Below are positions 3,001-48,075 of a stretch of 64,000 bases of DNA, in pieces. Position 1 is the stretch's first letter. Each line of letters opens with the position of its first letter. Source of the DNA: Ylistrum balloti (taxonomy: Eukaryota); assembly GCF_031769215.1 (NCBI RefSeq), contig NW_026781945.1, positions 744,001 to 808,000 on the forward strand. Direction: 5' to 3'. A model generated the notes under the pieces. It saw only the letters and a list, made by a program, of their open reading frames with translations. It ran no database searches and was not told where the DNA came from. Both the position numbers and the translations under genes were made by a program.

Positions 3001-3927
3001 ATATCGATATAGATATATGTAATGTTTACTACTAGTCTTCAAAACAAGAACATATACCTTAAATGCTGCATATCATGTCTAGCAAATTCTCATCAATGAT
3101 CAAGATTAATTCTCTAATACCCTTTCTCTGCATCCGGCTATGTTTTAGAACACACGGTTTTCAACAAAAACAAGATGAATTATAAATGTCTTGCGTTCCT
3201 TCTCTGTTTGATAGTGTTAGATTAAAAACAAGGAATATCCTTTCTGAGTATTTTAGGATACAATGATTGTATAAAACACACCAACGTTAATAGCACCTGA
3301 CGATACCAATTATAGACACAGCATGTTGACCGAATTTAATTGTATCAGACAGTTGTATAGTCCTTCTAGAACTCCTCATTCTTAAACTCATGGGCACGAC
3401 TGAGAAAAATCCAAATTGGTCAAATAAAATACCAAAATCGATCTGCTGAGGTGCACTCTTACCTTAAAACTACAATTGGACGAATTTGATTATTTTCAAT
3501 ATTGAACATTTTAAAAAGATTATCGATTCTGAACAGCCCTATACTAGTCAAATAAGTGACATGTTGGGTTAACAAACAAGAACACAGGTAAATCGTATAT
3601 AAGTTATTTTACATACTAGTGTTGTGTCCATGTCCCAACCTAAACTTATAACATGCTCTAGCGACACGGCAGTAATCATGTAACGTTTGTCGTTTACCTT
3701 TAGATCTGCCAGGGATCACACCTTGGACCTCTGACTTCAGAGAGGTTCTTTCTAACCGAATCGCTAGAAAGCAGCAAGTATACATCACTTAACATCTTAC
3801 ACAAATAATGTTTCTTGTATCATGTATGGTTCTACTGTTCAGTAACAATCATCAAATGCGGGAATTATTTCTGTCCATTTCTGGTCTAATTCGAAACGAA
3901 TGCCTGAAGGTACAAATCATTTGTATA

Positions 3928-5210
3928 TCCTAGAGGGAAGACATACCTGTATGATGTAGGTCCTTAGTATCACTAACGAGTCCTAGAGAGAAGACACACT
4001 TGTATGGTGTAGGAGCTTAGTATCACTAACGAGTCCTAGAGAGAAGACACACTTGTATGGTGTAGGACCTTAGTATCACTAACGAGTCCTAGAGAGAAGA
4101 CACACTTGTATGGTGTAGGACCTTAGTATCACTAACGAGTCCTAGAGAGAAGACACACTTGTATGGTGTAGGACCTTAGTATCACTAACGAGTCCTAGAG
4201 AGAAGACACACTTGTATGGTGTAGGACCTTAGTATCACTAACGAGTCCTAGAGAGAAGACACACCTGTATGATGTAGGTCCTAAGTATCACTAACGAGCC
4301 CTAGAGAGAAGACACACTTGTATGGTGTAGGACCTTAGTATCACTAACGAGTCCTAGAGAGAAGACACACCTGTATGATGTAGGTCCTAAGTATCACTAA
4401 CGAGCCCTAGAGAGAAGACACACCTGTATGGTGTAACATCACTAACTAGCCCTAGAGAGAAGACACGACTGTATCGTGTAGCATCTCTAACGAGTCCTAG
4501 AGAGAAGACACACCTGTATGGTGTAGGTACTTAGCATCACTAACGAGCCCTAGAGAGAAGACACACCTGTATGATATAGGTCCTTAGCATCACAAACGAG
4601 TCCTACAGAGAAGACACACCGGTATGTGTAGATCATTAGCATCACTAACGAGCCCTAGAGAGAAGACACACCTGTTTGATATAGGTACTTAACATCACTA
4701 ACGAGCCCTAGAGAGAAGACACACCTGTATGGTGTAGGTCCTAATCATCACTAACGAGCCCTAGAGAGAAGACACACCTGTATGGTGCAGGTCCTTAGTA
4801 TCACTAACGAGTCCTAGAGAGAAGACACGACTGTATGGTGTAGCATCTCTAACGAGTCCTAGAGAGAAGACACGACCGTATGGTGTAGTATCACTAACAA
4901 GTCCTAGAGGGAAGGCACACCTGTATAATGTAGCATCACTAACGATTCCTAGAGGGAAGGCACAGCTTTATAATGTAGCATCACTAACGAGTCCTAGAGA
5001 GAAGACACACCTGTATGGTGCAGTTCCTTAGTATCACTAACGAGTCCTAGTGAGAAGACACACCTGTATGGTGTAGCATTTCTAACGAGTCCTAGAGAGA
5101 AGACACGACCGTATGGTGTAGTACACTAACGAGTCCTAGAGAGAAGACACGACCGTATGGTGTAGTACACTAACGAGTCCTAGAGAGAAGGCACGGCTGT
5201 ATGATGCAGT
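3928..5210 (+). repeat. Minisatellite of ~26 units (44/45/53 bp) derived from a minimal hammerhead ribozyme, catalytic core inactivated (array A)
   Basis: The 45-bp unit CATCA-CTAACGA-GTCC-TAGAGAGAAGACACGACTG-TA-TGGTG-TAG aligns without gaps to the hammerhead monomer at 42175-42216. CUGANGA is CUAACGA and GAAA is GACA. The 53-bp units carry an extra ~8 nt (GACCTTAG). Confidence 0.85.
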
Positions 5211-10320: not shown

Positions 10321-12174
10321 TCATTCCTCCATACATTCACCGGAAATGACGATATAGTTCCTTTCTACACGCCTGTGTTGTCGTGTGTCTTTCTGGATGC
10401 TCCAAGCATAACTATATTTGTTTAACGTGTCAACTTCACTCATTGCTTTCTTGTCTAAAACTGCTCTCCTCACAAATACTTTGCAGCCTTGCTCTACAAC
10501 ACTTTGTATTTGTCTGCGAAGTCGGAGTTTGGCTCCAAATAGAAGGTTGTATTCCCATTCACGGTTATCAATGGTACCAGAAATTACTTTGGAAAACATA
10601 ACGTGCCGTTTTCCTCGCCTTTTCGTTTGTACTGCTATCTCATAAAGAGCAGATTTGCTTTTGTCTCTGAAAAGTTGAATACGTTTGTGGCACGTTCCTT
10701 TGAATTTTCTTCTGAAGCCATTTTTGGTTTTAGGTTCATTGACGTCTGTTGGGATATATGCGAGTCGCCACGATGACCAATCAAGACAGTTGCACGTGAA
10801 TACGGTTTCCGCTGTTTTCTCTCTTGGAATCATTTTAGCATCATCATTGCAGATGAGTTTGTCCTGGAATAATAAATTACATGTCATTAATATTTTTATA
10901 TAACAGCCTACTTGACATTCCGTTTTCACGAAAACTAATTTTATTTTTAGTAAAATGGAATTCATTTAACAGAAAAATGACCAATGATAGAAATATGATA
11001 TGTACCTTGATATTCTTGACTGTCACGTTTCTACGCTTTGGATTGACCTTTGACCTAGACGGGTCGACTTTTGTCCTTCTTGGAACGCCCTTCAAAGGTT
11101 GTGGCGCTGGAGAAGTCGTGGTTGGGGTTGACAATGGTGAAATAATTGGCGGCGCTGGGTGTATGCCACTTGTACCTGAATCAGTCTTTCTCAGAGTTCC
11201 GAATAATCCCTCCAGATCTCTGTGAATACCACCCGGTCCATATCGTCCGCGGACCTCGGCTTCATAGCCCTGAAGTAGACAGATAACAATATTATTGAAT
11301 GTTTTCATATAACACATGAAGGTCAGTGTAAATCAAACTACAAAATTTTAAGATAAAAGAATAAATCAAATCGTTTTAAACTTGATGAATTTAGTACTTA
11401 CAGAGAAGAGGTCATCGCCCCTTTCCCGATAACAGATGGCCATGAGGAAGTCACAGATGTTGGAGAATTCGTTGAGCTTGAGGTAATGTCCTTCAGTATT
11501 TGTTGATATTGTCTTGTAGAAGTCGTCAATGCCTTCATTTTCAAACACTTGTACGCCATATATCTTAACACCCTGAAATAATCCAAATTTAACGATGTTT
11601 ATTATACAATCAATACATAATTAATTAATTGTTGTATTTCAATGTAAGTACTAATTATTGTAAAATACGTCAAGTTGTCAACTTATATCAAATAATCATT
11701 TGACAACAAACTTACCATATTGTGAAGATCAGCGACTTCAGCTCTCCAGTCAATGTTGTCCACATTCAGCTCATACTCGGGTTCGTGTGGTTTGGCGTCT
11801 CCAATCATGACCAGAATTTTTTGTGATGCTGGAGTCCATGAGAAGTTTTGTCGGACCATGCGGAGAATAAGCTCGTAACATTCATCTTCGTCGCCGCCAC
11901 CAGTACCCTCTACACCTTTCACAAAGTTACAAAGTTCTACGACGTCGCTACAAAGGTCCAGTTGCTTTGTAAGATAGAAGACCTTTTCATCACAGTAGTC
12001 CCCGTGGGCTATGACACCGATTCTAATGCCTGGAATGTCCGCCTGAAGGCGTTGTATCATGTCCTGTAACCGTCCCTGGACCTCCTCAAGTATAGAGGAC
12101 ATCGATCCAGTAGTGTCAAAGGAGAATACGATTTCGAGAAGTCCTCCTGGAGGAAGCCTGGATGGTGTTGCCAT
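10321..12174 (-). CDS. vWA (MIDAS) + ET/HRT-like GIY-YIG-fold protein, copy 2 (478 aa)
   Basis: Exons 12174-11716, 11572-11402, 11269-11006, 10863-10321; GT-AG, phase 0, intact frame; near-identical to copies 1 and 3. Confidence 0.9.
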
Positions 12175-14898: not shown

Positions 14899-16757
14899 AT
14901 GGCAACACCATCCATGCTTCCTCCAGGAGGACTCCTCGAAATCGTATTCTCCTTTGACACTACTGGATCGATGTCCTCTATACTTGAGGAGGTCCAGGGA
15001 CGGTTACAGGACATGATACAGCGCCTTCAGGCGGACATTCCAGGCATAAGAATTGGTGTCATAGCCCACGGGGACTACTGTGATGAAAAGGTCTTCTATC
15101 TTACAAAGCAACTGGACCTTTGTAGCGACGTCGTAGAACTTTGTAACTTTGTAAAAGGTGTAGAGGGTACTGGTGGCGGCGACGAAGATGAATGTTACGA
15201 GCTTATTCTCCGCATGGTCCGACAAAACTTCTCATGGACTCCAGCATCACAAAAAATTCTGGTCATGATTGGAGACGCCAAACCACACGAACCCGAGTAT
15301 GAGTTGAATGTGGACAACATTGACTGGAGAGCTGAAGTCGCTGATCTTCACAATATGGTAAGTTTGTTGTCAAATGATTATTTGATATAAGTTGACAACT
15401 TGACGTATTTTACAATAATTAGTACTTACATTGAAATACGACCATTAATTAATTATATATTGATTGTATAATAACCACCGCCAAATTTGGATTATTTCAG
15501 GGTGTTAAGATATATGGCGTACAAGTGTTTGAAAATGAAGGTATTGACGACTTCTACAAGACAATATCAGCAAACACTGAAGGACATTACCTCAAGCTCA
15601 ATGAATTCTCCAACATCTGTGACTTCCTCATGGCCATCTGTTATCGGGAAAGGGGCGACGATCTCTTCTCTGTAAGTACTAAATACATTGAGTTTAAAAC
15701 GATTTATTTTTCCTTTCCTTGAAATAAAATTCTTAAGTTTAATTTACACTGACATTTATGTGTTAAATGAAAACATTTAATAATAATATTGTTATCTGTT
15801 TACTTCAGGGCTATGAAGCCGAAGTCCGCGGACGATATGGACCAGGTGGTATCCACAGAGATCTGGAGGGATTATTCGGAACTCTGAGAAAGGCTGATTC
15901 AGGTACAAGTGGCATTCACTCAGCGCCGCCAGTTATTTCACCATTGTCAACCCCATCAGCGATTTCTTCTGTGCCAAAACCAGTGAAGGGCGTTCCAAGA
16001 AGGACAAAAGTCGACCCGTCTAGGTCAAAGGTCAATCCAAAGCGTAGAAACGTGACAGTCAAGAATATCAAGGTACATATCATATTTCTATCATTGGTCA
16101 TTTTTCTGTTAGATGAATTCCATTTTACTAAAAATAAAATTAGTTTTCGTGAAAACCGAAGGTCAAGTAGACCGTTATATAAAAATATTAATGACATGTA
16201 ATTTATTATTCCAGGACAAACTCATCTGCAATGATGATGCTAAAATGATTCCAAGAGAGAAAACAGCGGAAACCGTATTCACGTGCAACTGTCTTGATTG
16301 GTCATCGTGGCGACTCGCATATATTCCAACAGACGTCAATGAACCTAAAACGAAAAATGGCTTCAGAAGAAAATTCAAAGGAACGTGCCATAAACGTATC
16401 CAACTTTTCAGAGACAAATGCAAATCAGCTCTTTATGAGATAGCAGTACAAACGAAAAGGCGAGGAAAACGGCACGTTATGTTTTCCAAAGTAATTTCTG
16501 GTACCATTGATAACCGTGAATGGGAATACAACCTTCTATTTGGAGCCAAACTCCGACTTCACAGACAAATACAAAGTGTTGTAGAGCAAGGCTGCAAAGT
16601 ATTTGTGAGGAGAGCAGTTTTAGACAAGAAAGCAATGAGTGAAGTGGACACGTTAAACAAATATAGTTACGCTTGGAGCCTTCAGAAAGGCACACGACAA
16701 CACAGGCGTGTAGAAAGGGACTATATCGTCATTTCCGGTGAATGTATGGAGGAATGA
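14899..16757 (+). CDS. vWA (MIDAS) + ET/HRT-like GIY-YIG-fold protein, copy 3 (478 aa), inverted relative to copies 1 and 2
   Basis: Exons 14899-15357, 15501-15671, 15809-16072, 16215-16757 (459+171+264+543 nt); GT-AG, phase 0. Confidence 0.9.
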
Positions 16758-37887: not shown

Positions 37888-39159
37888 TTATAAAGCTATG
37901 ACTTTCTCTCGCTCGATCTGTATTGTTATTATCAACTCGCGGCGATATTGACGGTTTATATCACTGTAAGATGGTGGAGAGACAGTTTGAACGAAACAAA
38001 ATCATTTTCACTATTTCATTATGTTTTAAATATGACAGAGAAAGAGTTGAATCATTCTTTCACTATATCGATATGATATATTAATGCTACATAAAAATAT
38101 TTTCACTGCCATCTGCCTCTGTTAATTTGCCATACAATTTTCCTTTGAAGCTGAAATTTTCATATTTCATATTCATGGGAGCAACATAAGTGATGTTTTC
38201 GTTGAATATAATTTAATTAGTAAGTAATAAGACGTTTTTTTTCCCATGCATTAGATATGGATAACCTGCGTTGACTGTTTTAATGCCAACTACAAATATT
38301 AGACAGCTATTTTTAGAAATGTGTTTGTAACTATGATATACAAATGCAAGAGAGTTAACACGAATATCACTTCAATTAACATATATGTCTTTTTCACTAA
38401 TAGACATCAACGGTCCTGTGCTCTTTTCATGATTTGCGTGTTCAGTGGTACTTGTTTTTACTATCTGTTTTCGTTACTGTTAAAGTTGCTTATCAAAGCT
38501 TTCCAAATACAGATTATAAATCTAGATGCAGTATCATGAAATATAAAATGGGATAATCGTATTATTTTAAGTGATCCTAAAAATCTAGAAATACCAAATA
38601 TGAAGTACTACTGTACTATATATAGCATAACCTTGTGCTTGATGGAATTGCCTATATACAATACATAAACAACCCAGGTTCGACATATATACATGGCTCA
38701 CACTGTACCATCACTACAGTTCAATATATCAGAAACACGATACACATCGCGTGATACAATGAAGAAAGAATTTTATCGCCAGTCACACACTGAAAGTTGG
38801 CATCATACGATAGCAACCATACCATAGCATAGCTGATCATCATAGTTTAGCCCTTCTAATAGAGATAAGGTAATGTTTTGTTGATGTAGCAGTCGAAAGA
38901 GAATCAGGAGTTTTAAAGAATTTCTTATGCTTAAAGGTATATTTATTTATCAAAACATTTGCATATTTCCAATATGTCCCTTGTATTTCGTTTAGTCCTA
39001 CAAGAATGACATATCATGTTTATCTTTCATCGACGTGTCATTCATATGATGAATAGGTTAGCAAGTATGAACCTCCACTTAAGGTTTTTGACTTTTATTT
39101 CGAGCGATTGGATCTTCCTCAATCGTCTCCTAAGTTACAACAGTTTAGGCCCCTTTTAA

Positions 39160-39429
39160 CACCACCGAGTTGTCCTAGAAGGACGCAACAGCTGTATGAT
39201 GTAGTATCACTGACAAGTCCTAGAAGGACGAAACAGCTGTGTGATGCAGCATCACTGACGAGTCCTAGAAGGACAAAACAGCTGTGTGATGCAGCATCAC
39301 TGACAAGTCCTAGCATTACAAAACAGCTGTATGATGTATTCTCACTGACAAGTCCTAGAAGGACGAAACAGCTGTATGATGTAGTATCACTGACAAGTCC
39401 TAGAAGGACGAAACAGCTGTATGGTGCAG
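39160..39429 (+). ncRNA. Tandem array of six 45-bp minimal type I hammerhead-like units (array B), cores mostly mutated
   Basis: Unit TATCA-CTGACAA-GTCC-TAGAA-GGAC-GAAA-CAGCTG-TA-TGATG. Four units have G8->A; the one CTGACGA unit has AAAA instead of GAAA and a GUG site. Confidence 0.85.
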
Positions 39430-41486
39430 TTGAATTCATCACTTGTCTCTGCCTTATCCTTTCCTTAATTTCAATCGAAAGGTGCTGGTAACTTTTGTTT
39501 GTCTTTGTATAATCTCAGAAAGAAAGTGTTCTACGGAATCGGAAGTAGCAGATAACGATCTATACTGGTCAAAAGGAAATTAACAGTGGTGAAACCAACA
39601 ATGCAAGTCATAACTGATTGATTGTCGGATATAGCTTCGCCATAGACTAAGAGACCAGAAAAGAAACATATCCATAGTAACACAAATATTACCAGAGGAA
39701 CTCTTTGATAAAATAAGTGCACATTATCGTCATTAATGATGTATATACCGAATGTCAGTATGTTAAGATCAAAAGGAAAAATAAATAGTGATACAGAACT
39801 AGTAAGTCAATGTAACACAAAGTTTAGAAAATATAATGTCACTTTGATCAAATTAAGTGGACTTCAACAGAAGGTAGACCTAGATACATTTTGTTCTTTC
39901 AAAATTTAGAATAAATCTCAATAAAAAATCGAAGTCGATAAACATATTTTATTGCAATGTGAGATAATTCTGTTAGATTTCTAGTCACCAAGTCCGGCGT
40001 GTATTAACTTGGTTCTCCTTTTTGAGAGAGAGAGATAGATTACTTCTGTGGGCATTACTGGTATCAGCAATATTGCAGAAGACGCTTACACTTCCGGAAC
40101 ACATATCGTCTTTTGGGTTTTTCAATGATATTAATGTAGATCTTTTACTTGTTCAGGTTTGGCTTCCGTTTATCGATTTGGAGAAAGAAAATTCGAAATG
40201 TGAATGTGGAGCTGCAGAATTACGATTTTGGTGACGTGTTGGTATCTTTGACGCATGCTAAAAATTCATATCTAAATACAGCATGTACTGGCACTACTGA
40301 CATAGAAAACATTAACAAAATTGGCACAAAAGAGGAAACATTGTGAACATAAAGTATATACAGATATATAAACCAATAACATCTGAAGAAGAATATAGAC
40401 ACAGGCTTCACAAACTATGACTGAATAGAATTAATCTACTAAGCTAAATTGAAATATGTTGTTATAATGGTTAACCAGTAAGCACATCATAGTCCTACCA
40501 ATAAAATCTACTGGTCCCTTCCCCTCTCTCCTTCTCCGCAAAGTTATATATACTTACATTTTCCATGACCCGCTTCCAAAATGGTCAGTACAACAACAAA
40601 GCTCACAAGTATGTCCATCTCTTGTCATAAGGCGCTCGACATGGTACTACACTATACTACGTACATAAAACACTATGAACATTACATAAGCCTTGCTTCA
40701 TAGGGCCATGTTTAGTGTTCCCAGATCGATAGCAAGTCTTTAGTGAGCGGTGCAGTCCCTCTAGATAGTCAATACATTGATTAGTATCGAGAGCCCCACT
40801 CCATATCCCGTGATGGTGTTACTGTATCGATCCGGAAAACACTGACGCAGCTTCCAGCTTGTGCAGAATCAAAGTCGGCTACTGTTCGCCTAATAATTTT
40901 ATTTGACGCTTTCAATCACATTTAATCATAGATATTTGGTGCATTCTGTATTGATTTTATTTCCTTTTTGTTGGAGGAATGAATTCTGGTGGTTTTCTTT
41001 CCGTTGGTAGAACACATCTTTTGCCTGCCTAGTACTGTTCAGTTATAAGATGATAGTACAAACATCTGTCATCAAGTCTTCTTTCTATCGTTATTTTCAC
41101 GACTTTGGTATAAACTTTGATCATTAGCTAAGTTTGAGATATTTCGTAATATCACTTTTTGATATAAAATGTCGAATTCGAAAGTTTTATTAATTGCAGT
41201 ATCTCGACTCCTTCCGTTTATGGTCCAGATTCAAAACTGATTCTCAAAGTTTTGACAGAATTTTCATTTCATCCCTGAAAACAAGACCCTTCGTGCTCGT
41301 TGAAAACCAACAACAATGATTTCTCTCTATAAGCGTCGCCCAAGTTCGAGAGTCTTGTTTGGTTCCAAGGACTAGTGCTCCTATATTGATTCAAGTCCTG
41401 GTATACTCTGTGAAAGTTGTTTTTTCACGACAGTTCAAATTTTCCAAATTTTGCCATTTAAAAGCAGAATTGATATATTTTTCATT

Positions 41487-41677
41487 NNNNNNNNNNNNNN
41501 NNNNNNNNNNNNNNNNNNNNNNNNNNNNNNNNNNNNNNNNNNNNNNNNNNNNNNNNNNNNNNNNNNNNNNNNNNNNNNNNNNNNNNNNNNNNNNNNNNNN
41601 NNNNNNNNNNNNNNNNNNNNNNNNNNNNNNNNNNNNNNNNNNNNNNNNNNNNNNNNNNNNNNNNNNNNNNNNNNNNN
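41487..41677. other. Assembly gap (191 N)
   Basis: Run of N. Confidence 1.
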
Positions 41678-41705
41678 ACAAATTGTCTTTATTGTGCAAA
41701 AACGG

Positions 41706-41859
41706 CTTGTATAAAATTTTCTCAAGGAACAGGAGGAAGTCAACGGCTAGGATGTCCTGAAATTCCTTGAGGAATTTTCATACAGGATATTTTCGATGAG
41801 ATATTAGCTGAGGAAAATCTCGACTTGAGGAAATCTCAAGTTGAGATGTTTTATACAAG
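41706..41859. mobile_element. Small foldback/MITE-like element
   Basis: Imperfect ~20-bp terminal inverted repeats (CTTGTATAAAATTTTCTCAA / TTGAGATGTTTTATACAAG) and an internal 11-bp hairpin at 41819-41845. Confidence 0.55.
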
Positions 41860-41985
41860 TGGGGCCAGATATATCAAAATTATGAAATTGATTGAATAAT
41901 TTGGCTAGTTCACTATTTAGATTGTGACATCACTTTCGATCAATTTGCCTCAGTTGCCTCCTTGGATTCAAAATGTATGCCCTTA

Positions 41986-42443
41986 GCATCACCGACGCGT
42001 CCCAGAAGGACAAAACAGTTGTATGATGTTTTATCACTGACAAGTCCAAGCAGGACAAAACAGCTGCATGGTGTATATAGCATCACCGACGAGTCCTAGA
42101 AGGATGAAATAGCTGTATGATATATATAGCATCACTGACGAGTCCTAGCAGAACAAAACAGCTGTATGATATGTTATCACTGACGAGTCCTAGCAGGACG
42201 AAACAGCTGTCTGATGTAGTATCATTGACGAGTCCTGGCAGGACGAAACATCTGTATTGAACGACGCTTTTCACTTGTGTGTCTTTTGTACAATCTGACG
42301 AGTCCTAGAAGGACGAAACAGCTGTCTGATGTAGTATCATTGACGAGTCCTGGCAGGACGAAACATCTGTATTGAACGACGCTTTTCACTTGTGTGTTGT
42401 ACAATCTGACGAGTCCTAGAAAGACGAAACAGCTGTATGATGC
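41986..42443 (+). ncRNA. Tandem array of nine minimal type I hammerhead units (array C), including intact cores
   Basis: Same monomer as array B. CTGACGA...GAAA intact at 42180, 42295 and 42406; a ~30-nt non-ribozyme spacer occurs twice. Confidence 0.88.
42175..42216 (+). ncRNA. Canonical minimal type I hammerhead ribozyme (predicted cleavage 3' of C42211)
   Basis: Stem I TATCA/TGATG; core CTGACGA 42180-42186; stem II GTCC-TAGCA-GGAC; GAAA 42200-42203; palindromic stem III ACAGCTGT; GUC triplet. Confidence 0.88.
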
Positions 42444-42880
42444 TGTATAATTCTATCATTTGTCTCTATATATTTTTCTAAATTTGTCATGAACGACGCT
42501 TTTCACTTGTGTGTCTTTTGTACAATCTTTATACAGGTACGGTTGTCTTATTACAACTCTATTTCTACAATGAGGCAATTATTGCAGTTTACAGTAGACG
42601 AAATAAATGCAACAAATCACTACAACTACGGATTCACTTACACGGTATTCAAACTATTTTGAAGCTGGACATGTAGGTCTGTGAAGATTAGGCCTCATTG
42701 TAAATCTACACTTGATTTAACTCTCCACTCGTGACCTATCACGGAAGAAAATTATTCTTACTATTTAGACAGAGCATTATCAGCCAGTCCATCCTTTGGG
42801 TATCAGGTACTCGACACTTTCTAAAACGTACCAAGGAAATCGTATTTCCATGAAAGCCCATGGATACATAAAGGTATGCT

Positions 42881-43622
42881 CTATTATCTTTGTTATGACA
42901 AGAAGATTATCTCATACAGAAAGCCATTATCTTTGTTATGACAAGAAGATTATCTCATACAGAAAACCATTATCTTTGTTATGACAAGAAGATTATCTCA
43001 TACAGAAAGCCATTATCTTTGTTATGACAAGAAGATTATCTCATACAGAAAGCCATTATCTTTGTTATGACAAGAAGATTACTCATACAGAAAGCCATTA
43101 TCTTTGTTATGACAAGAAGATTATCTCATACAGAAAACCATTATCTTTGTTATGACAAGAAGATTATCTCATACAGAAAGACATTATCTTTGTTATGACA
43201 AGAAGATTATCTCATACAGAAAGCCATTATCTTTGTTATGACAAGAAGATTATCTCATACAGAAAGCCATTATCTTTGTTATGACAAGAAGATTATCTCA
43301 TACAGAAAGCCATTATCTTTGTTATGACAAGAAGATTATCTCATACAGAAAACCATTATCTTTGTTATGACAAGAAGATTATCTCATACAGAAAGACATT
43401 ATCTTTGTTATGACAAGAAGATTATCTCATACAGAAAGCCATTATCTTTGTTATGACAAGAAGATTATCTCATACAGAAAGCCATTATCTTTGTTATGAC
43501 AAGAAGATTATCTCATACAGAAAGACATTATCTTTGTTATGACAAGAAGATTATCTCATACAGAAAGCCATTATCTTTGTTATGACAAGAAGATTATCTC
43601 ATACAGAAAACCATTATCTTTG
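42881..43622. repeat. 43-bp minisatellite, ~17 highly homogeneous units
   Basis: Unit CCATTATCTTTGTTATGACAAGAAGATTATCTCATACAGAAAG. Confidence 0.97.
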
Positions 43623-44348
43623 AAAGGGAAATGATCTGATTCCATGCCCGGTCAACGTTTAAAGTTTATGTATATCAACAGTCTTCATTCTAATTCAATT
43701 CCGCGAAACCATAGGAACAAATGGAGACCTTGAAAAAGTACAAGAATAGCAATATAAGGTGTTCCAAAAGGTTAGGCGTTTTCTGCTTCATCGATGAAAC
43801 TAGTCATCTAAATCTTGGTCAATCAAACCACAGGCAGTTGGTTCACTGATCAAAAATAGTACACACATATCTCTTATATTAAACAAACATGCTATTTTTT
43901 CATCAGCCAGCTAAGAGTCAGTGATCCAAGTTAGTAATTTCAAGCCCTCAGATTTAAAACTAACTTAACAACATAGGACTACCAGGAATACTGACGAGCA
44001 TCAAATATGTCAAAATTCATATCACGCAAGGAAATACAGAAAACAGACTAAATGACACGGGACCATAAAAGAGGCTAGCTCATTGTCTCCGAATGTGTTG
44101 ACGCCTCTAGATTCTACACGCAGAAAAGTGCTAGAGCTTTACAAGCTGGGGAACTTCGCAATTGTCATAATATTGTGGAACATCAGTATTTCAACAAACA
44201 TTCAATTTATCAATTTAACACAACACAGATACAGTTTACTTTCTTTCCTTTAATTCTTGATATACTTTACAATTATGTTGTCAGAAATGTCCTTTAGCTG
44301 TTTAACTGATACAAAGTGATACGAAAGGAAGATAGAATATATCTGGTT

Positions 44349-45083
44349 TCATGGAGTCAGTTTTTCAAGTAAATGGCCACGACTAGAGAGAAATTTCAGC
44401 AGGTCAGCAAACGACATCCGGGTAGCATAACGTCGGTCCAAAGGATGGAAACTGAGAAGCTTTTCTTCGCAGCAGACCGAGTGTGTAGCTGCAGCTCTAA
44501 CTTGACCGTCCGTGTCTTTCGGTAACGCTAACGGAGTAACCTCCCCTGAACAAACACCCAGAATCCGCGAAAGCTCAGAAGAGGAAGCAAAGGAAAAGTT
44601 TCTGTATGCTTTTAGTTTTTGTTTTAAAGATTTCAAATCAACGACTTCTTCTTCGTGACAGATTACCAAGTAGAAGCGTCCTTTCCTGTCTTTAAGAAAT
44701 AAGTTCTTGCAATAGACGGTTTCGTCATCTGGCTGTCTATCTTCCTTTGGTACATACTTGACGCTCTCTGTTGAAATCTCTAATTCTTGAAGGGTTTCAA
44801 AAAGTTGCAATGATCTGTTGTTCAGATCCGGTGGCAGTATGTCTGGTTTTGCTAATGGATTAACGTCCGCAGTAACTTTATGTCCGTTTTCCAGAAGAAT
44901 TTGAGAATTTGGAATTGTTTTGAAAACTTGAAAATCTGACCTTGGAAATAAATATGAAAGAAAGAAACCCCCAGCATCTCCCTCCCCGAGCCCCAACCCC
45001 CGGGCCCCATCGCGGGCCCTTTTCTCGTAGGTCGCCATTTTGATGGTTTTGACGTGGCCACCTGCAAACATCTTCACATCCAT
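44349..45083 (-). CDS. PRORSD1: PrdX/ProX (YbaK-superfamily) aminoacyl-tRNA deacylase domain protein, intronless 244-aa ORF
   Basis: KNLFLKDRKG, FASSSEL, GEVTPLAL, FHPL, FLSSRGH match the ProX/PrdX pattern. The start codon is uncertain; there is a ~90-aa N-terminal extension. Confidence 0.82.
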   Translation of the reverse strand: MDVKMFAGGHVKTIKMATYEKRARDGARGLGLGEGDAGGFFLSYLFPRSDFQVFKTIPNSQILLENGHKVTADVNPLAKPDILPPDLNNRSLQLFETLQELEISTESVKYVPKEDRQPDDETVYCKNLFLKDRKGRFYLVICHEEEVVDLKSLKQKLKAYRNFSFASSSELSRILGVCSGEVTPLALPKDTDGQVRAAATHSVCCEEKLLSFHPLDRRYATRMSFADLLKFLSSRGHLLEKLTP

Positions 45084-46645
45084 CTGTACAGCAACTTTTT
45101 GTTGAGATGTTCCTCGCTCTGAAACGGAACCTGGTTTTTTTCAGAAGAGCCACACCTCCGTCTTTTCCGCATGATCTCCCATCACGCGTATCCTATGATC
45201 ATGGTTTCTGGGCACATACATGTATGCACTTGCATTGCCCTTGGCCATGAGCATTGATGAGCGTCCACACTTATCCCATATCTATATCAACTGCAGCAAA
45301 GCAATCGAAATGCACGTGTATTTGAAACACGTGCATTCTAACATGGCTTGCTAGACGTGTATGCATATCATTCATTACTCAGTGGCATCAAATCGATGCC
45401 ACTATTCATCGACATGTTCGTCCTCTGTCATATCGTGCTTCAGGGATCAATCTCCTTGACCCACCATATTAACTTCATATCGTCCATGCGGTCCATTAGT
45501 TTCTCCTTAAAGCATCATTTTCCTTGTCTTCAAACCTTCATGATTCCTGCAGAGAAAAAAAAAGAAATTTCAGTAAGTTCCATTAATGCTACACATGTGT
45601 GCATATATTTGGAAATATTTTGCGCTGATATTTAGATTAAAGGCTGCAAGTCTTTGTTCAATATTGCGGAGTTGCAGCACAATACAGGCAAACACCAATC
45701 GGAGATTGTATACCTAGGTACCATTTCTCTCCCCTCGACCGTGTTGATGAAAGTGTTGTAACATGATTAAATTTTAAAACGGCTTGCCATATAATACACT
45801 TGAGCCGCGTAACCTTACCATTAGACAGGGACACGTGTAGATCTGTAATCTCTCTGTTTATCACGAACAGTTACCGCATTGATGTCCGCATAAAAAACAA
45901 TACAATATCTCCAACTGATTTTATCATACACTTATTCACGGTATTATTTTTGTGTTTGCTGTTTATCCATCATGTGCTATTCGCATTGTTGGTTGTTTAT
46001 ATACATACATATATAAATACACTAGTATCTATAAAATGAAATCGATAAATGTAGTTCAGATTTTAATTAAATATTATTTATATTTCCAACAGAGAGTATA
46101 ATATGTTCCAAAATACATTTTCGTATACAATCTACATTCATAGGAAATCGCTAAATCAGATGCTTGGAGGTTCAGTAAAAAAAAGGTTAAACATGTCTGT
46201 GTCTAATCGGTGAAACTACACAAGTATACGTTACTGTTACAATTTGACAAACCTTTCATTTAGCTCAGAAATCAGTTCAGCACATGATTAACGGTGATAT
46301 GCCCGGTAAGAAATGGCAGTTTGATCACCAACAACAACCTTAAATAGAAACCCAAATTTATTTTTAGCACATTCTGCAATAGAATGTGAGGTATGCTTAT
46401 GTAGTCGATAATAAATCCACAATTACAATTCTTCAAAAAACGAATCATGAACAATTAAGTCATTTTGAATAATCATATCTACTTAATTTATATATTGTTT
46501 TCTTGTTATATGTACTATCTTTTCGTTTTGATATAATTGTTTTGTTTTCTTTTTTATCGACTACATGCTCCTGAGTTGTTTCACTGCATTGCATCACCTT
46601 GAGGAGCCGCATATTTTTAGAGTCCGTAATATATAACAACTCCTT

Positions 46646-46655
46646 ACCGGAAGTG
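46646..46655. promoter_or_regulatory. ETS/GABP-type motif ACCGGAAGTG in the interval between divergent genes
   Basis: Single perfect motif between PRORSD1 (-) and BDP1 (+); overlaps a minus-strand CCG|GTAAGG donor. Confidence 0.3.
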
Positions 46656-48075
46656 AAGCATTTGACCACCATGGACGACACATGAGAAACACGAGATATT
46701 GAAGGATGCCGCAGACTATTTGAAATAATATTCTTGAATCATTTCTGTGGTTTCTATGCTTTTCTTACCATGAAATGGAACCACGTTCTTATCTACACAT
46801 GGTGTATAGATAACACAGCTTTCTAGAACAGTGAGTTAAGCTGGAAACTCTGTGCCATATTGAACTCTGATGCTGTACTGATATACAGTACGGTACAGGT
46901 GTACGATCCAGTGTCAATCTGTTGGTTTTGTCGTTGTCTATTTGAACACAAAACTGGTATATACTTTGTATCAGTTAAATATATGCCACCCAGAGTGTTA
47001 TACAATATTTACAGGACAATTACACGATTACTTTCATAATTCTACTGCAACAATGTTAAAGATTTATAAGGCAATAGACGCACTGTAAGGTAGTCAGCAC
47101 AACAACGTCAGATCATTGATCAGGCATCCTGTGTCATAGAAGTAACTTAATGTCTGATATTAAACCATGTAGATAATGTATTTTGTTCCAAATGTATTAT
47201 CTAGTATAGGCATTTGAGGGGTAGTATTTTGAGTAATCATCTAGTCATATGTATGATCATTTGAAGTAGAAACATTTTAAACATTTGCAACGAAGAAAGG
47301 ATTCTTTTTTTTTACTTGAATGTCCCAATATAAAATGCAACATTGTACATTTATGCACGCCTATGACATTTGTACTAGATGATCTCGATGATTATACACC
47401 GAGAACAAATTCAGTGATATGAATTGTCATTTTAGGACAAAGTTCAGCAATAGAAATCAACATTTCTTGTGCAGATATTTACAGACTTACATTGGCTATT
47501 AGGTCATGTTAAACAGATGCCACCCTTTTTGTTACAGATGTTTTAGAGAATTTAATATGTTTCTATTTCAAGTGATCTGGCTTTTCAGTAACTAACTGAT
47601 TACACCAAGCAGTAACTATCCCTCAAATGCGGGACTATTACCCATATGTGGGGTTCCATCCAGTCTGATAAAAAAATATGCTGGTTCATTAATAAGGTTT
47701 CCAAGTGACCCCAACTGTTCATGATAGTTCTTGTCTACATATAGATGAAGGAAGTCTGTTTGGGTTTTGACAAGGTTATTGATTTGTTGTCCATATCAAA
47801 ACCAAAGGGAACTTAACAATAATTCATTTTAGCACAGGTGTTTGTATGGATGAGTGTAATAGCCTGTTGTCTCCACCAAAAATGTACAGCTTATAAACAA
47901 AAATTAACGCAAAAAAGTTAGATTTGTTGGAAAATGAAAAAAATTGTTTGATTTTTATTTTCATGATTATTTTAAGATGTTACCCACATGATAGGCACTC
48001 TCAGTGTACATGTTACACACATGGTTGTGATTCAAATTTATTTATAATTTCAGAATTGAGGTCTTCGTATTAAAG

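What the first reader, a model, noticed from the sequence alone, without database searches (positions are those of the whole stretch)
41986..42443. Tandem array whose monomer is a whole minimal type I hammerhead ribozyme, with at least one fully canonical unit
Seen: 42175-42216 reads stem I (UAUCA), CUGACGA, stem II (GUCC-UAGCA-GGAC), GAAA, CAGCUG, UC, stem I' (UGAUG), i.e. every conserved hammerhead nucleotide and a GUC site. Cores at 42295 and 42406 are also intact. Stem III is the self-complementary octamer ACAGCUGU. Established: minimal type I hammerheads with a palindromic stem III occur in Penelope-like elements, retrozymes and newt/schistosome satellites, and cleave as dimers. Inference: here almost no spacer exists between ribozymes, so neighbouring units can form double hammerheads in cis; the 42180 core can pair with sites at 42211, 42326 and 42437. 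A + strand transcript would be cut into short 5'-OH/2',3'-cyclic-phosphate RNAs that could be ligated into very small circles.
Basis: partly seen in the sequence, partly recalled or inferred. Interest (0 to 1): 0.9.

Follow-up and report, generated by a model that had tools for sequence, protein, structure and literature searches.

The report
Decaying 45-bp hammerhead ribozyme minisatellite
This stretch is a short tandem array in which each 45-base repeat is one copy of a hammerhead self-cleaving RNA motif, grown inside a small dispersed repeat element, but only one of its nine copies is still intact, so it looks like a mostly dead relic of a known kind of ribozyme-carrying mobile element rather than a working RNA-cutting machine.

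Summary
Window 41986-42443 (+) carries nine 44-45-nt units, each a minimal hammerhead (HHR). Unit C5 (42174-42217) has every conserved core nucleotide, a GUC site, a 5-bp stem I, a 4-bp stem II and the palindrome ACAGCUGU as stem III. It scores 33.3 bits on Rfam RF00163, just under the gathering score of 34.

The functional reading is only partly supported:
- Six units carry core-killing changes (G8A, G12A, U4C, C3U).
- C7 and C9 keep the core but have lost the 5' arm of stem I.
- Core and non-core positions diverge at the same rate (10.5% against 9.0%), so selection is not visible.
- The best ribozyme is a permuted type III hammerhead across the C4/C5 junction (42159-42209; RF00008 44.1 bits).

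The array is the amplified HHR module of a dispersed element of about 180 bp. The window holds four more copies: two single-HHR copies and two dead arrays.

Relatives with the same core and palindrome in host-associated metagenomes show strong stem I/II covariation. They are solitary or about 340 nt apart, never in 45-nt tandem.

First-stage notes of this scan report many more 45-bp HHR arrays elsewhere in this genome; I did not check them.

Verdict: a real, mostly decayed, cargo-free extreme of the retrozyme / Penelope-type HHR repeats.

The parts
41930..41985 (+). 5' module of element copy C (boundary approximate)
   Evidence: Weak but repeated homology to the 5' flanks of copies B, D and E, centred on CCTCAG..GCCTCCT.
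41986..42172 (+). Units C1-C4: hammerhead-derived, all with a changed core (C1 U4C/A9C/G12A; C2 G8A/G12A/U16.1C; C3 U4C, C11.1U; C4 G12A)
   Evidence: Alignment of units; weak RF00163 hits of 23-25 bits.
42174..42217 (+). Unit C5: the only fully canonical type I reading (stem I 5 bp, CUGACGA, stem II GUCC/GGAC, GAAA, palindrome, GUC site before 42212)
   Evidence: RF00163 33.3 bits, E 2.6e-06; core listed as intact. As an isolated monomer it does not fold as a hammerhead.
42159..42209 (+). Permuted type III hammerhead across the C4/C5 junction. Stem III is the C4 palindrome paired with the C5 palindrome (8 bp). Stem I is a hairpin, UGAUA-UGU-UAUCA. The core and stem II come from C5. Predicted cut after A42166 (GUA|U).
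   Evidence: RF00008 44.1 bits (gathering 48.5), E 2.3e-09, no non-standard pairs. Minimum-free-energy fold is the three-way junction, z -2.66. The helix has mean pair probability 0.54 in the ensemble of the whole 471-nt array.
42219..42262 (+). Unit C6: C3U, palindrome broken (ACAUCUGU), 3' arm replaced by the start of the tail
42259..42296 (+). Spacer 1: an internal copy of the last 38 nt of the element's 3' tail, joined directly to the core of C7
   Evidence: Exact 24-mer found at 42259, 42374 and 42491; repeat family D4.
42289..42443 (+). Units C7 (intact core, GUC, no 5' stem I arm) and C8 (identical to C6), tail spacer 2 (42374-42410), and unit C9 (intact core, GUA, stem II mismatch, no 5' arm). 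Together with C5 and C6 these form the 115-nt higher-order repeat.
42444..42528 (+). 3' tail module of copy C, ending ...TTTTGTACAATCT
   Evidence: Aligns with 39414-39515 of copy B and with the tails of D, E and A. Homology stops at the same point in each.
39085..39515 (+). Sister copy B of the same element, with array 39159-39430 (6 units, none intact; G8A dominant, G12A, two GUG sites)
3928..5210 (+). Sister array A: about 25 units of 45/53 nt derived from the same hammerhead, all dead (G5A, a changed 3' half of stem II and a changed GAAA core segment)
28025..28205 (+). Copy D: the same element with a single, decayed hammerhead unit (about 180 bp)
   Evidence: Model R1 hit at 28082-28122; sequence; flank alignments.
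3262..3437 (-). Copy E: the same element, single decayed hammerhead unit, opposite strand
   Evidence: Model R1 hit at 3342-3385 on the minus strand; sequence; flank alignments.

Best explanation
The stretch is one copy of a short dispersed element. The element has a 5' module of about 50-70 nt, one minimal hammerhead, and a 3' tail of about 90 nt, roughly 180 bp in all. It belongs to the hammerhead-bearing non-autonomous retroelement world (non-LTR retrozymes and Penelope-related repeats).

In this copy the 45-bp hammerhead module was amplified in place into a minisatellite. A further local 115-bp duplication swept in part of the tail. The most likely cause is DNA-level slippage or unequal exchange at microhomologies. 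The same genome region readily makes unrelated 38-54-bp minisatellites.

The family consensus unit is a fully canonical hammerhead. In a head-to-tail array, each pair of adjacent units can build a complete type III hammerhead in cis. The two neighbouring palindromes form an 8-bp stem III. The 3' arm of one unit and the 5' arm of the next form stem I as a hairpin.

At this locus the units have since decayed neutrally, partly at the two CpGs inside the core (C7pG8 and C11.1pG12). Only the C4/C5 junction is still predicted to be competent, cutting after A42166.

Shown: motif identity, the repeat anatomy, shared flanks, the fold prediction, lack of core conservation, and covariation in relatives. 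Inferred: the retroelement nature, the DNA-level expansion, and any cleavage.
For: - Motif identity and significance.
- The consensus of 14 units is a canonical hammerhead with a GUA site.
- Five copies in the window share a 5' module and a 3' tail. Their homology ends at common points, and nothing is shared beyond them. Two of the five carry a single hammerhead.
- Each array has its own private variants. A has G5A and a 53-nt variant. B has G8A and GUG sites. C has C3U and a 115-nt repeat that includes the tail.
- Core substitution rate is 15/143, non-core 37/411, Fisher p 0.62.
- 11 of 86 differences from the consensus are CpG to TpG/CpA changes at the two core CpGs.
- Unrelated minisatellites lie in the same window: 38 nt x 20, 43 nt x 17, 39 nt x 23.5 and 54 nt x 23.6.
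- The type III fold is the minimum-free-energy structure, z -2.66. Its stem III has pair probability 0.54 in the full array.
- Relatives in animal host DNA from metagenomes: at least 120 loci, 95% of cells paired, 137 double-change cells against 46 in shuffles, 0 of 500 shuffles as high.
- Literature: minimal hammerheads in Penelope pseudo-LTRs and dispersed through genomes (PMC4209133); tandem retrozyme repeats of 150-450 bp (PMC7229834); consensus lengths of 51-972 bp and a Penelope origin (bioRxiv 10.64898/2026.07.22.740005).
Against: - No reverse transcriptase or Penelope ORF was found next to any copy. Nine of the 15 ORFs of 130 aa or more were scanned, and no ORF over 133 aa lies within about 2 kb. 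The retroelement link therefore rests on the ribozyme type and the literature alone.
- No target-site duplication or exact 5' end could be defined.
- The first units of arrays B and C share U4C. This hints that an array may already have existed in a mobile ancestor, so part of the amplification could predate insertion or happen at the RNA or reverse-transcription level.
- Units within one array are not independent, so the test for selection is weak.
- Expression and cleavage could not be tested.
Confidence: 0.72

Rival explanations
1. This is a working ribozyme array. A plus-strand transcript is cut at several GUH sites by cis or trans double hammerheads into 45-115-nt RNAs with 5'-OH and cyclic-phosphate ends. 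Some of these are ligated into very small circles with a biological role.
For: There is one complete hammerhead and two further intact cores. The C5 5' arm is complementary to the 3' arms after 42166, 42211, 42326 and 42437. Palindromic stem III allows the dimeric action documented for such motifs (PMC4209133). Retrozyme repeats elsewhere do yield circular RNAs (PMC7229834).
Against: - Six of nine units have lethal core changes, and two more lack stem I.
- There is no excess conservation of the core.
- The sister arrays are entirely dead.
- The isolated type I unit misfolds.
- Minimal hammerheads without loop-loop contacts cleave poorly in vitro (PMC4209133).
- The nearest ORF with a recognised domain (44349-45083) is on the opposite strand, so read-through from it would carry the antisense of the ribozyme.
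- There is no evidence of transcription.
Confidence: 0.1
2. The arrays arise at the RNA or reverse-transcription level. One route is template switching of a reverse transcriptase between the repeated palindromes. Another is rolling-circle copying of a self-cleaved, religated hammerhead RNA. Array-bearing elements would then themselves be the mobile units.
For: - B and C are independent insertions with no shared sequence outside the element, yet both carry arrays whose first unit has U4C.
- The junction of the tail end to the hammerhead core in C looks like a 5'-truncated copy set behind a full 3' end, as in Penelope partial tandems (PMC8557442, PMC11167929).
- Unchecked first-stage notes of this scan report many such arrays across the genome.
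Against: - Single-hammerhead copies D and E exist.
- The repeat boundary inferred from the flanks (AG|CATCAC ... TGATGCAG|) lies 8 nt past the cleavage site, not at it.
- The 115-nt repeat copies a locus-specific deletion junction (C6 = C8), so it arose locally.
- Each array has private variants.
Confidence: 0.15
3. The element is a non-autonomous DNA transposon with a central tandem-repeat core, which merely captured a hammerhead-like sequence. Such transposons are described in some invertebrates; this comparison is from my own knowledge and was not checked here.
For: The architecture is left module, variable number of tandem repeats, right module.
Against: No terminal inverted repeats were found around the arrays (0 inverted pairs of 40 nt or more in 37000-45000). 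The repeat is a complete, covariation-supported hammerhead class otherwise tied to retroelements.
Confidence: 0.03

Closest known systems
Non-LTR retrozymes (metazoan tandem repeats carrying type I hammerheads; Cervera & de la Pena 2020, PMC7229834; Li et al. 2026 preprint 10.64898/2026.07.22.740005)
   Same: Head-to-tail genomic repeats, each with one type I hammerhead with a short palindromic stem III. Low GC. Solo and multimeric copies are dispersed in the genome. Metagenomic relatives of this hammerhead sit about 340 nt apart, the classical retrozyme spacing.
   Different: The period here is 45 bp, so the repeat is the ribozyme alone with no cargo sequence. Published monomers are 150-450 bp, and the shortest consensus in the preprint is 51 bp. 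The array is nested between non-repeated 5' and 3' modules of a dispersed element. Expression as circular RNA is untested, and most units are dead.
Minimal hammerheads of Penelope-like elements (Cervera & de la Pena 2014, PMC4209133; Lunse et al. 2017, cited in PMC7761336, paper not held)
   Same: No real stem III; a palindrome allows dimeric action. No obvious loop-loop contacts. Massive dispersed occurrence, mostly away from full elements.
   Different: Stem II here is 4 bp without the bulged nucleotide, not the 6-8 bp described for the Penelope type. No RT/GIY-YIG ORF or pseudo-LTR context was found at this locus.
Newt satellite 2 and Schistosoma Sm-alpha hammerhead satellites; the double-hammerhead model (Forster et al. 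1988, cited in PMC4209133)
   Same: Satellite DNA whose transcripts carry hammerheads that need two copies to form an extended stem III.
   Different: Those repeats are about 330 bp, so the two copies are far apart. Here the partners are adjacent, and one junction is by itself a compact 51-nt type III hammerhead.

Membership tests
Hammerhead ribozyme (Rfam clan CL00010) | Invariant core C3 U4 G5 A6 N7 G8 A9, G12 A13 A14, A15.1-U16.1, and H17 not G | tested here: met
   Met in C5, and in the cores of C7 and C9. Not met in C1-C4, C6, C8, or in any unit of arrays A and B.
Hammerhead ribozyme (Rfam clan CL00010) | Three helices around the core | tested here: met
   In the type III reading at 42159-42209, stem III is 8 bp, stem I is 5 bp and stem II is 4-5 bp, and this is the minimum-free-energy fold. 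The type I monomer reading has only a 3-bp stem III with a 2-nt loop and misfolds.
Hammerhead ribozyme (Rfam clan CL00010) | Score at or above Rfam's gathering threshold | tested here: not met
   RF00163 scores 33.3 against 34, and RF00008 scores 44.1 against 48.5. The whole-window scan at gathering thresholds gives no hit. Both are narrow misses with full-length alignments.
Hammerhead ribozyme (Rfam clan CL00010) | Compensatory changes in stems I and II | tested here: inconclusive
   Among the 14 window units there are 0 pairs with changes on both sides; the units are too similar, 87% column identity. Among 80 metagenomic relatives with the same core and stem III, all 6 stem I pairs and 2 of 4 stem II pairs covary, with 0 of 500 shuffles as high.
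Hammerhead ribozyme (Rfam clan CL00010) | Mg2+-dependent self-cleavage at H17 | not testable with these tools
   Needs a transcription and cleavage assay.
Non-LTR retrozyme | Tandem genomic repeats, each with a type I hammerhead | tested here: met
   The period of 45 bp is below the published range.
Non-LTR retrozyme | Monomer has non-ribozyme sequence and is expressed as a self-cleaved linear and circular RNA | tested here: not met
   The unit is 44 nt of hammerhead plus about 1 nt, so there is no cargo. Expression is not testable here.
Penelope-like element hammerhead | Lies in the pseudo-LTR of an element encoding RT and a GIY-YIG endonuclease | tested here: not met
   Apart from a tRNA-editing-domain ORF on the other strand, no ORF of 80 aa or more overlapping 34000-50000 exceeds 176 aa. 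The ones scanned have no RT domain. A decayed or distant element was not excluded.
Penelope-like element hammerhead | Long stem II (6-8 bp) with an unpaired 5' nucleotide, and a short stem I (PMC4209133) | tested here: not met
   Stem II is 4 bp with no bulge, and stem I is 5-6 bp.

The most novel reading that the evidence does not exclude
Where arrays of this family are still intact, elsewhere in this genome, their transcripts would fold unit by unit into cis type III hammerheads and chop themselves into 45-nt RNAs, or religate into about 90-nt dimer circles. That would make this the smallest, cargo-free retrozyme-like system. The arrays themselves might then be produced by reverse transcription of such RNAs rather than by DNA slippage.
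Probability: 0.1. Interest if true: 0.8.

Novelty: new variant of a known kind. Interest (0 to 1): 0.4.

Why it matters
Hammerhead-bearing repeats are known in animals as retrozymes of a few hundred bases and as solitary Penelope-type motifs. A repeat that is nothing but the ribozyme shows how far the unit can shrink.

It also shows that a head-to-tail array turns a dimer-dependent type I motif into a self-sufficient type III hammerhead at every junction. If intact arrays elsewhere in this genome are transcribed, they would test two things: whether cargo-free ribozyme RNAs are made in vivo, and whether ribozyme activity has anything to do with the spread of the satellite.

At this locus the answer appears to be no. 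The core decays like the rest, which is useful negative evidence that amplification does not depend on catalysis.

Tried and rejected
- The whole-window Rfam scan at gathering thresholds gave nothing. Hits appear only in the permissive scans.
- Covariation among the window's own units was uninformative, with 0 double changes.
- I looked for the element's flanks in 120 metagenomic hammerhead loci. Only the ribozyme itself matches, so these relatives share the ribozyme class, not the element.
- I looked for Penelope ORFs next to the metagenomic relatives. The large ORFs are ordinary animal genes (class C GPCR, ENPP, dsRBD), plus one zf-RVT hit 1.5 kb away on the other strand in L045. There was no direct link.
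- I tried to infer the host taxon from the tRNA-editing-domain ORF using the protein atlas. It was uninformative.
- Lunse et al. 2017 could not be read by DOI or PMC id.
- Cofolding two C5 units gave an extended duplex rather than a double hammerhead, so equilibrium folding does not support the trans-dimer reading.
- Chance resemblance is rejected.
- A ribozyme on the minus strand is rejected: all the Rfam hammerhead hits are on the plus strand.

Full report
**What is there**

Tandem Repeats Finder gives a 45-nt period array at 41984-42257 (5.8 copies, 77% matches). It also gives a 115-nt higher-order repeat at 42180-42442 (2.3 copies, 95%). I cut the stretch into nine 44-nt units, C1 to C9, starting at 41986, 42031, 42080, 42129, 42174, 42219, 42289, 42334 and 42400. 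I aligned them with five units of a sister array. The majority consensus of the 14 units is a fully canonical hammerhead:
- stem I 5' arm GUAUCA
- core CUGACGA
- stem II GUCC, loop UAGAA, GGAC
- GAAA
- palindrome half CAGCUG, then U and A (a GUA site)
- stem I 3' arm UGAUGU

**Is it more than chance**

Rfam at gathering thresholds reports nothing in the 64 kb. A permissive scan of 41800-42700 gives RF00163 (type I) at 42174-42217 with 33.3 bits against a gathering score of 34, E 2.6e-06, over the full model. Weaker hits fall on all the other units. The strict core-plus-stem-II pattern occurs twice against 0.00 expected from shuffles. A version allowing 3 mismatches occurs 15 times against 0.03 expected.

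**State of the units**

| Unit | State |
|---|---|
| C5 | Intact core, GUC site, stem I 5 bp, stem II 4 bp |
| C7 | Intact core, GUC site, but the 5' arm of stem I is replaced by the end of the element's tail (UACAAU) |
| C9 | Intact core, GUA site, same loss of the 5' arm, one mismatch in stem II |
| C1 | U4C, A9C, G12A |
| C2 | G8A, G12A, U16.1C |
| C3 | U4C, C11.1U |
| C4 | G12A |
| C6 = C8 | C3U, broken palindrome, 3' arm replaced by the start of the tail |

G8A, G12A and C11.1U are CpG to CpA/TpG changes at the two CpGs that lie inside the core. For arrays B and C together, core positions differ from the consensus at 15 of 143 cells and non-core positions at 37 of 411, Fisher p 0.62. There is therefore no sign that catalysis is being preserved. 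The caveat is that units within one array are not independent.

**The best ribozyme is a permuted one**

Taken alone, C5 as a type I monomer has a stem III of 3 bp closed by a 2-nt loop. It does not fold as a hammerhead.

In a head-to-tail array three things come together. The palindrome of unit n pairs with that of unit n+1, giving 8 bp. The 3' arm of n and the 5' arm of n+1 form a hairpin. The core and stem II of n+1 complete a type III hammerhead.

For C4/C5 this is the minimum-free-energy structure of 42156-42212 (-16.9 kcal/mol, z -2.66). It scores 44.1 bits on RF00008 (gathering 48.5, E 2.3e-09, all pairs standard). Its stem III has mean pair probability 0.54 in the ensemble of the whole 471-nt array. 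The predicted cut is after A42166.

C6 carries C3U and a mismatched palindrome, and C4 carries G12A. It would need an intermolecular dimer, which equilibrium cofolding does not favour.

**Context: a dispersed element**

The window holds four more members of the family:
- Array B, 39159-39430: six units, none intact, G8A dominant.
- Array A, 3928-5210: about 25 units of 45 or 53 nt, all with G5A and other changes.
- Copy D, about 28025-28205 (+): a single hammerhead.
- Copy E, about 3262-3437 (-): a single hammerhead.

All five share a weakly conserved 5' module and a 3' tail of about 90 nt ending TTTTGTACAATCT. Homology stops there, and nothing beyond it is shared. The basic element is thus about 180 bp with one hammerhead, and the arrays are amplifications of its 45-bp hammerhead module.

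In C, two 38-nt spacers are copies of the end of the tail joined directly to a hammerhead core. The 115-nt repeat reproduces a locus-specific deletion junction (C6 = C8), so it arose locally.

The same window has unrelated minisatellites of 38, 39, 43 and 54 nt with 17-24 copies each. Amplification of units this size is therefore common in this genome, ribozyme or not.

First-stage notes of this scan list many other 45-bp hammerhead arrays in this genome, up to about 105 units, and a dispersed hammerhead repeat of about 230 bp. These are unchecked leads. So the scan has seen this family before, on other DNA.

**Relatives elsewhere**

I scanned metagenome contigs for the core plus the same stem III palindrome, leaving stems I and II free. 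The scan gave at least 120 loci, mostly from a few host-associated data sets. Neighbouring ORFs are animal genes.

The window-derived model finds one hammerhead per locus, or two about 340 nt apart, and never a 45-nt tandem. Across 80 of these hits, 95% of cells pair. All six stem I pairs and two of four stem II pairs show changes on both sides. There are 137 double-change cells against 46 in shuffles (0 of 500 as high), and structures with the 3' partners shifted by 1-3 columns pair at only 23-34%.

The ribozyme class is therefore real and under structural constraint elsewhere. The flanks of the window element have no match in those loci.

**Comparison with what is known**

Minimal type I hammerheads with no stem III, or a palindromic one, occur in Penelope pseudo-LTRs and dispersed in animal genomes. 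They act as dimers with low activity in vitro (PMC4209133; PMC7761336).

[quoted passage not shown] A 2026 preprint extends consensus lengths to 51-972 bp and derives retrozymes from Penelope pseudo-LTRs.

The present array matches the hammerhead definition and the tandem-repeat criterion. It fails the "cargo plus circular RNA" aspect of retrozymes. It also fails the pseudo-LTR context and the long stem II of Penelope-type motifs. It is best called a cargo-free, nested variant of these repeats.

**Mechanism and odds**

- Most likely (0.72): a relic copy of a hammerhead-bearing non-autonomous element whose ribozyme module expanded by DNA-level slippage or unequal exchange and then decayed. One junction may still cleave if it is transcribed.
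- A working multi-ribozyme locus: 0.10.
- Array formation at the RNA or reverse-transcription level: 0.15. The shared U4C in the first unit of B and C keeps this open.
- A DNA transposon with a repeat core: 0.03.

**Not done**

There was no expression data, no cleavage assay, no genome-wide census and no exhaustive search for a decayed Penelope element. Lunse et al. 2017 could not be read.

Noticed in passing
window:42883-43622: A very regular 43-nt x 17 minisatellite (97% matches) lies 355 nt downstream of element C. It has no hammerhead similarity and has no counterpart next to copy B.
   Followed up: partly
window:8793-9551, 53070-53987, 54846-56118: Three more unrelated minisatellites: 38 nt x 20, 39 nt x 23.5 and 54 nt x 23.6. 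This genome region makes 38-54-bp arrays readily, which bears on how the hammerhead arrays grew.
   Followed up: partly
window:5554-7505 (-), 10321-12174 (-), 14899-16757 (+): A triplicated gene-like unit has a vWA-domain ORF and an ORF with a sub-threshold GIY-YIG hit (PF19239, 17.3 bits against a cutoff of 21.4). The first copy abuts the dead hammerhead array A. Penelope endonucleases are GIY-YIG, but no RT was seen and the link is untested.
   Followed up: no
window:44349-45083 (-): A 244-aa ORF with an aminoacyl-tRNA editing domain (PF04073, 67 bits) lies on the strand opposite to the hammerhead arrays. Arrays B and C lie downstream of its stop codon in antisense orientation.
   Followed up: partly
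L039, L095, L099, L108 (metagenome loci): These loci carry pairs of hammerheads of the same class on one strand, about 340 nt apart (713 nt in L099). That is classical retrozyme-like spacing in what looks like animal host DNA within host-associated metagenomes.
   Followed up: partly
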